A model generated the notes under the pieces. It was given only the letters and a program-made list of their open reading frames with translations. It had not been told where the DNA came from and ran no database searches. From the NCBI RefSeq assembly GCF_039654945.1, contig NW_027361712.1, positions 19,778,001 to 19,842,000 on the forward strand: DNA of 64,000 nt, written 5' to 3'. This DNA is from Dendrobates tinctorius (Eukaryota). Positions 41,101 to 44,100 of the stretch are shown one piece after another; the first letter of the stretch is position 1, and the number at the start of each line of letters is the position of its first letter. A program made the position numbers and the translations under genes.

Positions 41101-44100
41101 GTGATACTTACCAGCGACCGGCTCCCCTGCTGCTCATCGCTGATCGCGCGAGAATGTCCGGCTCCATTTCTCGTCGTCTGCTTCTTGCTGGGCTTCCTGC
41201 TGTGACATCCAGCGACGCGTGGAGGCGGGCGGGAGGACGCAGGATCGCTGTGTGTGAATGGTAAGTATCGTGCGCTGCGTCGCTGCTGCATCGCTGTGAG
41301 ATCTTTCTGTATGAAAGCTCACTAGCGATCATTTAGCGATGCACCAGCGATCCTGACCGGGTCGGATCGCTGGTTGGATCGCTGGTGCATCGCTAAATGT
41401 AAAAGGGCCTTTAGAGTCAAGAGTTAACAATACACATCATAAGGTCAACCGGTCTTGTAAAAAGTTAAATTGTAATTGCAGATTAAATTGTAATGTGCAT
41501 GGGATTCTTTAAATGGGATTTTATTTAAAGTTTGCCCATATGATTATTATGAAGATTATAGTGACATATTTATTACAACGTACCTTGGAGGTTTTTGTTC
41601 TCTCTCTTAAAAGTTTCAAGATGCTCCAGGGACTCCTCATAAGCATTCTTTAGCTTGAATAGCTCAGTGCTAAGTGTACGAGCTTCTTTTTGAGACGACT
41701 CTAACTCAGTCTGTGACTCTTCAAATTTCTGTTTCCACTCTGCTAGGATCTAAAAATCGACATGTCTATTACATATTTGCCACAAGAGATTTTCCATGTT
41801 TTTCTCATTAGTTAATTATAATCACCTTATCAAAATTCCTTTGTTTTTTGTCCAGTGCTGCAGATGCAGCATTTGACCTCTCCAGGTCGACCATCAGGTC
41901 CTCAATTTCATTCTGCAAGCGATGTTTTGTCTTCTCAAGAGATGAACATTTTGCATTGACAGCCTCTACAGCCTCTTCTGCCTCCTGAAGCCTTTGTGCC
42001 AGTTTCTTCCTATCAAAAAAGGTGTAATGACATATAGGTTTTCAGATTTGGAGGCTACGCCGATGTGTAATCAAGATGGATAAATGAGCAAACATCACTC
42101 ATGCAAATATTAGCAGGTGTCGTGCATTATTTCACCCACCTTTGCTGCCCCGAATGAAGAAGAGCCTTCTAACAAACAAGCTTTATGCTCGTCTTATACA
42201 GAAGCAGGAAACATAATCCAAGCAAAAAGCTTCTCTGTTGGAAGGAATTTTACAGCTGGGACACATTCAGACACTTGCCTGTGTTAGAGAAGCAGTAGAT
42301 TACTGGAACAATATCAGGATGGAGCCAAGCAAAATTCAGCAAAACAACACACATCAATCAAACCAAGGAAGCAAGTAATGATACATGGGTTCAAGTAAAT
42401 AAGTCCTGTTAATTCCATATAAACTGCATAATCAACATTAATGTGCTAGTATCTTAAATCATCTCACTCACTTGGCCTCCTCTAGCTCCTCAGTCCTTTG
42501 AATGGCATCAGTTTCATATTTGGTTCTCCATTGGGCCACTTCTGAATTGGCTTTAGACAAAACTCTTTGCAACTCAGCCTTGGCTTCTTGTTCTTCTTCA
42601 TACTGCTCTCGGAGCAGATCACAGTCATGGCGGGCAGACTGAAGAGCATGAGCTAGGGCATTTTTAGCCTTTACAGAGAAAGAGATTTTGAATTATATTA
42701 ATAATATGAGATAACAAGCTAATAATCTATTAGCCAAACATCAGTTACTCCCGTCCCATACACAGGTACTCTGGTTCAGCTGAAAATGCATGTTTTTATG
42801 ACACCTTTGGTTGCAGATTCTCTTCCCTGAGAACAAAAGAATTTGGTACTGAAATTCAACGTGACCAATTACCAAACATTTTTTGTCATGATATCATCTC
42901 TTAGGGGAGAGTTAGGAAGCCCCTATACACATAACACAATTGGCTGGTTTTACTGATATTGGCAAACGTTTGCTGACTTTGTAATGTGAATGGGTACAAT
43001 AATACGCAGTTTAAAACATTTCTTAGATTACCTTATTCTCTTCCTCCAATTGTCTTTTAAGGTCTTCCAACTGTTGAGTGTAAGTTTGTTTTCCTCGTGT
43101 CAGCTGAGATACTAATGCTTCTTTCTCATCTAGTCTACGTGACAACTCTCCATTTTCTGTTTGCAGTTTTGCCTTCTGTGATATAAAGTCATTCAATGAT
43201 CTTTGCGCTTCTTCAAACTTAGTCCGATGCTCATTCATTTGGTCTTCTAAAGTGCGACACATCTTTTCTAAGTTGGCCTGTGAACAGATAATTACGATAA
43301 AATCAAGTAATCTAAAAAATATGTTTCTAAATATATTAAATCAAAACAACTACAAATGTAATACATTAAACCTGATGACACACAGGAATAAGCATATGAA
43401 AGTCGTCGTTTTCGCAAATGCTCTTTGTAATATTCCTAATGTATTCTGATCTAATTTAGTCAACCATTTTCATCCAATATTTAAGTTCTCAATGTTATTA
43501 TATTAACAACTAGTTTTAATCTCAAATTTACAGAGCCATGTTTTGGGCAAATAATGCTTATATAGCTACAAGCATATTTTTTACATATGTTATTGGTTGT
43601 ACAAAAATACATTTTCTGCGTCAGAAAGGAGCTATAACGACTATACACAGATTTAAATCTCCGTTTCTCACCTTGGCTTTTACCACCTGTTCCATGTTGG
43701 ATGCTACATCATCTAGCTCAAGTTTGAGCTCACTCTTCTCCTTTTCCAATTTCTGTTTTACCCTTTGCAGGTTGTCAATCTGCTCACTGAGCTCAGCCAC
43801 CGAGTCCGCATGCTTCTTTCTTAGTGTAGCAGCGGTGGCCTCTGATTGCAAAGTGGATTCCTCTAGATCTCTCCTGAGTTTCAGGAACTCTGCCTCTCGC
43901 TTCTTGTTAAGTTCAAGTTGCACTGAGGTGGCTCCTCCAGCTTCTTCTAAACGTTCACTGATTTCCTCCAACTCTCTGGACAGGTCAGAGCGTAGCTTCT
44001 CTACCTTAGCCCTTGCAGTTCTCTCTGCTTCCAGTTCCTCCTCCAGCTCCTCAATTCGTGCCTTAGGAGAGATGAAATATATGCATCAATTATTAGTCAC

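What the first reader, a model, noticed from the sequence alone, without database searches (positions are those of the whole stretch)
42165..42245. Intronic miR-208 with a 208a-like 3p arm and a 208b-like 5p arm
The 3p arm AUAAGACGAGCAUAAAGCUUGU (seed UAAGACG) differs by 1 nt from mammalian miR-208a-3p as I recall it. The 5p arm AAGCUUUUUGCUUGGAUUAUGU is ~2 nt from miR-208b-5p and much further from 208a-5p. It is sense to myh6, in the intron after the EELEEAK exon, so it is a co-transcribed MyomiR. The mosaic fits a state predating the mammalian MYH6/MYH7 (208a/208b) tandem duplication. The family itself is known.
Basis: partly seen in the sequence, partly recalled or inferred. Interest (0 to 1): 0.8.

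Follow-up and report, generated by a model that had tools for sequence, protein, structure and literature searches.

The report
Frog miR-208 in heart-myosin intron
This is the frog's ordinary copy of miR-208, a heart-muscle microRNA carried in an intron of the cardiac myosin gene; its "mixed" look arises mainly because mammalian miR-208a changed its 5p arm, not because the frog copy is a special hybrid.

Summary
A 77-nt hairpin on the minus strand (42242..42166) matches Rfam mir-208 over the full model (75.9 bits, E 1e-16). It folds well (-33.6 kcal/mol, z -3.75). It lies sense in a 462-nt intron of a cardiac-type myosin heavy chain gene. A spliced contig from the same species removes exactly that intron.

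The arm counts hold too. The 3p arm is 1 nt from miR-208a-3p and 4 from 208b-3p. The 5p arm is 3 nt from mouse 208b-5p and 7 from 208a-5p. A contig from an unidentified, probably distant frog has both arms identical (0/44 changes) against 11/53 changes elsewhere in and beside the hairpin.

The evolutionary reading is not established. The "208b-like" 5p arm is also shared with teleost mir-736, which I found in the same intron of fish cardiac-type myosin genes. So it is an old shared state, and mammalian 208a-5p is the derived one. Published views on the date of the 208a/208b duplication conflict: mammal-specific (Nachtigall 2014) or a two-gene cluster already in the jawed-vertebrate ancestor (Peterson 2022). 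The arm sites do not decide between them.

No second copy lies in the window. Mature RNAs were not observed. Known family, low interest.

The parts
42166..42242 (-). pre-mir-208 hairpin
   Evidence: Rfam RF00749, 75.9 bits, E 1e-16, full model. MFE -33.6 kcal/mol, z -3.75. Consensus fold with frog and fish homologues has 34 pairs, 3 of them compensatory.
42211..42232 (-). 5p arm AAGCUUUUUGCUUGGAUUAUGU (presumed passenger strand)
   Evidence: Read from the sequence. Identical in L001. 3 nt from the mouse 208b 5' arm, 7 from 208a-5p, 3 from the fish mir-736-type 5p.
42198..42210 (-). terminal loop, 13 nt
   Evidence: 5 of 13 positions differ in L001 while both arms are unchanged.
42176..42197 (-). 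3p arm AUAAGACGAGCAUAAAGCUUGU (presumed guide strand); seed UAAGACG at 42196..42190
   Evidence: 1 nt (U13 for A13) from mmu-miR-208a-3p as printed in PMC4079956. Identical in L001. U13 faces a U in the fold, a 1x1 mismatch.
42156..42159 (-). CUUC, a CNNC-type motif 17-20 nt after the 3p end
   Evidence: Invariant columns 94-97 of alignment A1 across the two frog-type and three fish-type sequences. A role in Microprocessor recognition is inferred from established knowledge of CNNC motifs.
42010..42471 (-). 462-nt host intron (GT..AG, phase 2) that splits the codon of K1390 in human MYH7 numbering
   Evidence: Splice sites read. A contig of run X10 (same species, 0 mismatches) joins 42008 to 42471, skipping 462 nt. 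Residue numbering.
42472..42668 (-). upstream rod exon ([10 protein letters not shown]...TEELEEA + 2/3 of K)
   Evidence: Aligns to residues 1325-1389 of PDB Myosin-7 chains, E 5.5e-33; one difference in the printed alignment.
41826..42009 (-). downstream rod exon ([17 protein letters not shown]...QRNFDK)
   Evidence: Aligns to residues 1391-1451 of PDB Myosin-7 chains, E 2.1e-29. Contiguous with its neighbouring exons in the X10 contig.
35144..55863 (-). coding span of the host cardiac-type sarcomeric myosin heavy chain gene ([18 protein letters not shown]... to ...QQKLHDEE*)
   Evidence: Stop-free stretches on the minus strand. No other sarcomeric MYH exons elsewhere in the window. A full exon model was not built.

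Best explanation
The hairpin is the frog's conserved mir-208 gene. It is transcribed as part of the pre-mRNA of a cardiac-type (MYH6/MYH7-class) myosin heavy chain gene. It is then presumably cut from the 462-nt intron by Drosha/DGCR8 and Dicer. The expected guide is the 3p arm AUAAGACGAGCAUAAAGCUUGU (seed UAAGACG), acting in heart muscle on the same kind of targets as mammalian miR-208a/b and teleost miR-736.

Its 'mosaic' look is not a hybrid. The frog 5p arm keeps an old state that fish mir-736 and mammalian 208b also keep, and mammalian 208a changed its 5p arm. The frog 3p arm is 208a-like with one U13 change, which is shared with the one other frog-type contig found.

Shown: the hairpin, family membership, intron position, host transcription and splicing, and arm conservation. 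Inferred: processing, guide-strand choice, heart expression and targets.
For: - Rfam mir-208 at 75.9 bits, E 1e-16, full length, the only hit above a gathering score in 64 kb. Stable fold, z -3.75.
- Sense in a GT..AG intron of a gene whose flanking exons align to residues 1325-1451 of Myosin-7 chains.
- A 1,533-nt contig of a run of the same species, with 0 mismatches, joins the exons exactly across the 462-nt intron.
- L001, a contig whose exons are about 78% identical in DNA, has the hairpin in the same intron. It shows 0/44 arm changes against 11/53 changes in loop and flanks (binomial P 3.6e-5). The rest of the intron does not align.
- Fish contigs L002, L009 and L013 hold a mir-208-family hairpin (73.6-76.2 bits) in the same intron. 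Their 3p is 1 nt from ssa/gmo-miR-736-3p.
- The consensus fold has 34 pairs, 3 with compensatory changes, and an invariant CUUC at +17.
- At all five 5p sites where 208a differs from 208b, frog and fish carry the 208b state.
- miR-736-3p is the dominant arm and is 26,616-fold heart-enriched in salmon.
Against: - No small-RNA data: no run listed is on record as RNA, the one taken as RNA (X10) is a guess, and only contigs were available. Mature 5p and 3p species, their ends, strand ratio and tissue are unobserved.
- The ancestral state of 3p sites 10 and 18 is ambiguous: frog and 208a have G and C, fish and 208b have A and U.
- The taxa of L001, L002, L009 and L013 are inferred from sequence, not from labels.
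- Positional homology with the mammalian introns (intron 27 of MYH6, intron 31 of MYH7) was not checked on mammalian DNA here.
Confidence: 0.82

Rival explanations
1. One reading: frogs have a single mir-208 that descends unduplicated from the gene that later gave mammalian 208a and 208b, and the mosaic reflects that pre-duplication state.
For: Nachtigall 2014 reports one copy in coelacanth, amphibians, reptiles and birds, and two only in mammals. There is no second mir-208 and no second sarcomeric MYH in the window, which extends 8 kb upstream and 35 kb downstream of the gene. DNA contigs of three related species cover the hairpin at single-contig depth, so there is no second copy at least 80% alike in those contigs. 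5p site 13 (U in frog and fish, C in both mammalian copies) fits one change on the mammalian stem.
Against: Peterson 2022 reconstructs two genes (Mir-208-P1/P2) already in the jawed-vertebrate ancestor, with two in elephant shark and coelacanth. Nachtigall 2014 also reported absence from ray-finned fish, yet teleost mir-736 matches the mir-208 model in the same intron, so that survey missed divergent copies. 3p sites 10 and 18 group frog with 208a and fish with 208b. A window and contigs cannot show absence from the whole genome.
Confidence: 0.4
2. Old-duplication history: the frog gene is the orthologue of one of two ancient paralogues (Mir-208-P1, the 208a lineage). The second paralogue lies elsewhere in the genome or was lost in frogs. 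Mammalian 208a-5p simply evolved fast.
For: Peterson 2022 SuppFile3. The frog 3p shares G10 and C18 with 208a, while teleost 736 shares A10 and U18 with 208b; this costs one step per site under this tree against two under the other. The C-terminus ...QQKLHDEE resembles the MYH6 ending as I recall it, which is memory only.
Against: A10 is paired U-A in fish but is a C.A mismatch in 208b, and C18U only turns G-C into G.U. Both changes can easily be convergent. 5p site 13 needs two parallel changes under this tree. No second copy was seen in the window or in related-species contigs.
Confidence: 0.4
3. A true hybrid: the hairpin arose by gene conversion or recombination between a 208a-type and a 208b-type copy within the frog lineage.
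For: Only the arm pattern itself.
Against: No donor copy was seen. The same 5p backbone occurs in fish mir-736, so no exchange is needed to explain it. The frog 5p differs from 208b-5p at its own sites (13, 15, 16).
Confidence: 0.03
4. A chance or decayed hairpin that is no longer processed.
For: No small-RNA evidence was obtained.
Against: E 1e-16 to the family model. 0/44 arm changes against 11/53 outside the arms in L001. Compensatory pairs and a conserved CNNC motif.
Confidence: 0.02

Closest known systems
Mammalian mir-208a (intron 27 of MYH6)
   Same: Same Rfam family. Intronic and sense in a cardiac myosin heavy chain gene. The 3p guide is identical at 21 of 22 nt, including the seed UAAGACG.
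   Different: The 5p arm differs at 7 of 22 nt. Mouse 208a-5p, GAGCUUUUGGCCCGGGUUAUAC, carries five states found in neither frog, fish nor 208b. The frog 3p has U13, which makes a U.U mismatch in the stem.
Mammalian mir-208b (intron 31 of MYH7)
   Same: Same family and seed. The 5p arm is 3 nt from the mouse 208b 5' arm as printed in PMC3902903.
   Different: The 3p arm differs at 4 nt (positions 10, 13, 16, 18).
Teleost mir-736 (ssa-, gmo-, dre-mir-736)
   Same: Matches the same Rfam model at 73.6-76.2 bits. It sits in the same intron, directly before the exon that starts at K1391, of a cardiac-type MYH gene in contigs L002, L009 and L013. Same seed, 3p-dominant and heart-enriched.
   Different: Its 3p starts with G and has A10 and U18. 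The intron is about 245 nt in L002. It has a different name and was counted as 'miR-208 absent' in the 2014 fish survey.
mir-499 (intron 19 of MYH7B)
   Same: Same six-letter seed UAAGAC and the same habit of living in a myosin intron.
   Different: A different Rfam family and host gene, and a 5p-arm guide (ssa-miR-499a-5p). It gave no match at this locus.
Xenopus mir-208 (xtr-mir-208) in myh6
   Same: Expected direct orthologue. Amphibians are reported to have miR-208 as a single copy, and Xenopus myh6 is the main cardiac myosin.
   Different: I could not obtain its sequence with these tools. No paper in the library prints the frog-type 3p, so whether Xenopus shares U13 is untested.

Membership tests
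mir-208 (Rfam RF00749 / MirGeneDB MIR-208) | The hairpin matches the family covariance model above the curated gathering score | tested here: met
   75.9 bits against 56.4, E 1e-16, model positions 1-77 of 77.
mir-208 (Rfam RF00749 / MirGeneDB MIR-208) | Seed UAAGACG at nt 2-8 of the 3p arm | tested here: met
   3p arm AUAAGACGAGCAUAAAGCUUGU at 42197..42176.
mir-208 (Rfam RF00749 / MirGeneDB MIR-208) | Intronic and sense within a cardiac-type sarcomeric myosin heavy chain gene | tested here: met
   GT..AG intron 42471..42010. The flanking exons align to Myosin-7 residues 1325-1389 and 1391-1451.
mir-208 (Rfam RF00749 / MirGeneDB MIR-208) | Same intron position as in other vertebrates | tested here: inconclusive
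   Met for a second frog-type contig (L001) and three fish contigs (L002, L009, L013). Mammalian positions are known only as intron numbers from reviews and were not checked on DNA.
mir-208 (Rfam RF00749 / MirGeneDB MIR-208) | Arms conserved while loop and flanks are free to vary; stem kept by compensatory change | tested here: met
   0/44 arm changes against 11/53 outside the arms, P 3.6e-5. 3 compensatory pairs among 34.
mir-208 (Rfam RF00749 / MirGeneDB MIR-208) | Mature RNAs of about 22 nt from both arms with a 2-nt offset, 3p dominant | not testable with these tools
   No small-RNA run was available. No listed holder is on record as RNA, and only contigs could be laid.
mir-208 (Rfam RF00749 / MirGeneDB MIR-208) | Heart or slow-muscle restricted expression | not tested
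   The tissue of run X10 is unknown. Heart enrichment is shown only for salmon and cod miR-736 in papers.
Unduplicated (pre-208a/208b) single-copy state | Only one mir-208-family gene in the genome | tested here: inconclusive
   One copy in 64 kb and no second MYH. Single-contig depth over the hairpin in three related species at 80% likeness. The whole genome was not searched.
Unduplicated (pre-208a/208b) single-copy state | The 208a/208b duplication is younger than the amphibian-amniote split | tested here: inconclusive
   Papers conflict. Arm sites split: two favour the older date and one the younger.

The most novel reading that the evidence does not exclude
Frogs truly carry one unduplicated mir-208. 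With fish mir-736 as outgroup, it then documents complementary arm divergence after the mammalian duplication: 208a changed only its passenger 5p arm, at five sites, while 208b changed its guide 3p arm. In addition, a U13 guide variant, seen so far in two frog-type sequences, would shift supplementary target pairing.
Probability: 0.3. Interest if true: 0.25.

Novelty: already known. Interest (0 to 1): 0.12.

Why it matters
It matters little beyond annotation. It confirms that the cardiac myosin / miR-208 host-and-guest arrangement is intact and under strong constraint in this frog.

One useful by-product is a clean polarity argument: mammalian 208a-5p is the derived arm. The other is a reminder that teleost mir-736 occupies the same intron, so the published claim that ray-finned fishes lack miR-208 is a matter of naming and search sensitivity. 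The age of the 208a/208b duplication remains open and needs labelled whole-genome data.

Tried and rejected
- A full-text search for the exact frog 3p arm found no paper.
- The supplements of Nachtigall 2014 hold no precursor sequences.
- Searches for xtr-, xla-, aca- and gga-miR-208 and for MirGeneDB gene names gave one figure legend and one count table only.
- Earlier notes of this scan held nothing on mir-208 or on a second cardiac MYH in this genome.
- Full-length MYH relatives could not be reached. The exons are at most about 130 aa, the word search only sees proteins of similar length, and references that read through stops are not accepted. I therefore searched one exon and fetched unlabelled genomic contigs.
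- L003 and L004 (GC-rich introns of 415-500 nt, taxon unknown) and L005-L008 (short introns; a UnaL2 LINE element in L006, so fish-like) have no mir-208-family hairpin in this intron, even at E 0.1.
- I did not fetch contigs from the exon groups that look mammalian (P0003-P0007 and most of the group P0009-P0025), so as not to pull human DNA. No contig fetched was taken for human.
- I considered a chance hairpin, an antisense gene (44.8 bits on the plus strand, below threshold) and a gene-conversion hybrid, and rejected all three.

Full report
**What is there.** The stated coordinates hold a 77-nt hairpin, but on the minus strand (42242..42166).
- A scan of all 64 kb against Rfam at gathering thresholds returns a single match, RF00749 mir-208. 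It scores 75.9 bits against a gathering score of 56.4, E 1e-16, and covers model positions 1-77 of 77.
- A permissive scan adds only the plus-strand mirror image at 44.8 bits, below threshold, and unrelated weak hits. There is no second family member in the window.
- A 111-nt stretch around the hairpin folds at -33.6 kcal/mol. None of 200 dinucleotide shuffles does as well (z -3.75).
- The 5p arm AAGCUUUUUGCUUGGAUUAUGU is 42232..42211. The loop is 42210..42198. The 3p arm AUAAGACGAGCAUAAAGCUUGU is 42197..42176, with the seed UAAGACG at nt 2-8.

**Host gene and intron.** The minus strand carries a sarcomeric myosin heavy chain gene.
- It runs from a start at 55863 ([18 protein letters not shown]...) to a stop after ...QQKLHDEE at about 35144.
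- The hairpin lies in a 462-nt GT..AG intron, 42471..42010, in phase 2.
- The exon before it aligns to residues 1325-1389 of full-length Myosin-7 chains in the PDB (E 5.5e-33, one difference in the printed alignment). The exon after it aligns to residues 1391-1451 (E 2.1e-29). Skeletal Myosin-4 comes second in both searches.
- The intron therefore splits the codon of K1390, and the gene is of the cardiac MYH6/MYH7 class.
- A tblastn of all host open stretches against the rest of the window finds only transposon-derived matches. No second sarcomeric MYH lies within 8 kb upstream or 35 kb downstream.
- I did not build a full exon model or a tree, so 'myh6' remains a plausible label and not a tested one.

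**Transcription.** One run of the same species (X10, guessed to be RNA) holds a 1,533-nt contig with no mismatch to the window.
- Its consecutive pieces are 41584-41749, 41826-42008 and 42471-42671.
- It joins the exons by skipping exactly 462 nt, with CT..AC ends on the plus strand, which is GT..AG on the minus strand.
- The host gene is therefore expressed and the hairpin's intron is a real, spliced intron.
- No run listed is on record as RNA, X10's RNA status is a guess, and only contigs were available. The mature miRNAs, their ends, the strand ratio and the tissue are not shown.

**Conservation.** I searched the downstream exon against the protein collection and fetched genomic contigs that carry exon-sized open reading frames.
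- L001 has exons about 78% identical in DNA and 100% identical in protein. It holds a mir-208 (72 bits) in the same intron.
- Against the window, L001 shows 0/44 changes in the arms. It shows 5/13 changes in the loop and 6/40 in the basal stem and near flanks (binomial P 3.6e-5). The rest of the roughly 490-nt intron does not align at all.
- DNA contigs of three closer relatives (98.6%, 96.7% and 95.5% alike) cover the hairpin at single-contig depth. The one listed change inside the hairpin, 42170 in organism C, lies in the basal stem outside the arms.
- Not all differences were listed by the tool, so I do not claim the arms are unchanged in those three species.
- A consensus fold of the frog-type and fish-type sequences has 34 pairs, three with compensatory double changes. 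A CUUC (CNNC-type) motif 17-20 nt after the 3p end is invariant.

**The mosaic claim: the counts.** I used sequences printed in papers. They are mmu-miR-208a-3p and mmu-miR-208b-3p (PMC4079956), the mouse mir-208a precursor (PMC6721825) and the mouse pri-miR-208b 5' arm (PMC3902903).
- The frog 3p is 1 nt from 208a-3p (U13 for A13) and 4 nt from 208b-3p.
- The frog 5p is 3 nt from mouse 208b-5p and 7 nt from 208a-5p.
Its '2 nt' figure refers to human 208b-5p, which I know only from memory.

**The mosaic claim: what it means.** Three contigs (L002, L009, L013) have a hairpin in the same intron, directly before the K1391 exon. It scores 73.6-76.2 bits on the mir-208 model.
- Their 5p is AAGCUUUUUGUUUGUGUUAUGU and their 3p is GUAAGACGAACAAAAAGUUUUU.
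- That 3p is 1 nt from ssa-miR-736-3p and gmo-miR-736-3p (GUAAGACGAACAAAAAGUUUGU) as printed in the salmon and cod supplements.
- miR-736 shares the seed family of miR-499 in zebrafish. It is 3p-dominant and 26,616-fold heart-enriched in salmon. I therefore read these contigs as ray-finned fish mir-736.
- With fish as outgroup, at all five 5p sites where 208a and 208b differ (1, 9, 12, 21, 22), frog and fish both carry the 208b state.
- The '208b-like 5p arm' is thus an old shared state, and mammalian 208a-5p is derived. The Rfam consensus shows the same combination as the frog across most of both arms.

**Timing of the duplication.** The arms do not date it.
- At 3p sites 10 and 18 the frog has G and C like 208a, and fish have A and U like 208b. 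That costs one step per site if the frog is a 208a orthologue and fish 736 a 208b orthologue. It costs two steps per site if the duplication is mammal-specific.
- 5p site 13 (U in frog and fish, C in both mammalian copies) points the other way.
- A10 is paired U-A in fish but forms a C.A mismatch in 208b, and C18U only turns G-C into G.U. Convergence is therefore easy at both sites.
- The literature is split. Nachtigall 2014 reports one copy in coelacanth, amphibians, reptiles and birds, two in mammals, and none in ray-finned or cartilaginous fish.
- Peterson 2022 (MirGeneDB 2.1) lists a two-gene Mir-208-P1/P2 cluster in the last common jawed-vertebrate ancestor. It counts two genes in elephant shark, coelacanth and human.
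- The fish contigs found here show that the 2014 survey missed divergent members.

**Comparison with the known.** This is the amphibian member of the MyomiR arrangement described for mammals: miR-208a in MYH6 intron 27, miR-208b in MYH7 intron 31 and miR-499 in MYH7B intron 19.
- In Xenopus, myh6 is the main cardiac myosin.
I did not check that.
- Nothing about the locus departs from the family, apart from the single U13 change in the guide. That change makes a U.U mismatch in the stem and is shared with L001.

**Limits.**
- The taxa of all fetched contigs are inferred from sequence only.
- Mammalian intron homology was not checked on DNA.
- Whole-genome copy number was not measured.
- Targets lie outside the window.
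- No contig was taken for human, and I avoided fetching mammal-like exon groups for that reason.

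Noticed in passing
L002:376-451, L009:85-160, L013:186-261: Contigs that look like ray-finned fish carry mir-736 in the same myosin intron as tetrapod mir-208, and it passes the Rfam mir-208 gathering score (73.6-76.2 bits). The 2014 report that ray-finned fishes lack miR-208 therefore reflects naming and search sensitivity.
   Followed up: partly
L003:154-653, L004:1601-2014: Two cardiac-type MYH contigs have exons 97% identical in protein to the frog exon, and GC-rich, internally repetitive introns of 415-500 nt at this position. They hold no mir-208-family hairpin, even at E 0.1. 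Their taxon is unknown (bird-like composition).
   Followed up: partly
window 54145-55233 (+): A Tc1/mariner-like transposase reading frame (open stretches of 123 and 239 aa) lies inside an early intron of the myosin gene.
   Followed up: no
window 41016-41436, 28613-29011, 5950-6331: One repeat family is present in a myosin intron and twice elsewhere in the window (tblastn cross-matches). It has palindromic parts that give weak, sub-threshold Rfam plant-miRNA hits (MIR7526, 38-45 bits), and is probably a MITE-like element.
   Followed up: no
window 61371-61760 and 62833-63202: Two copies about 1.45 kb apart of the same translated motifs (AEVGWTKEMKGVG..., AEGNV..VRSDLEG.GKQSS.VRS) lie in a GC-rich stretch. 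This looks like a tandem or dispersed repeat upstream of the myosin gene.
   Followed up: no
window 125-681: A short-period tandem repeat gives open reading frames in several frames on both strands (AALYCMG..., GGCIILY...).
   Followed up: no
window 41827-42013 and 42470-42667, as laid: Related frogs hold paralogous MYH contigs about 82-85% alike in these two exons. Their introns at the same position are about 116 nt (organism C) and about 306 nt (organism D). Their sequences could not be read, so whether the longer one holds a hairpin is unknown.
   Followed up: no
I did not check it.
   Followed up: no
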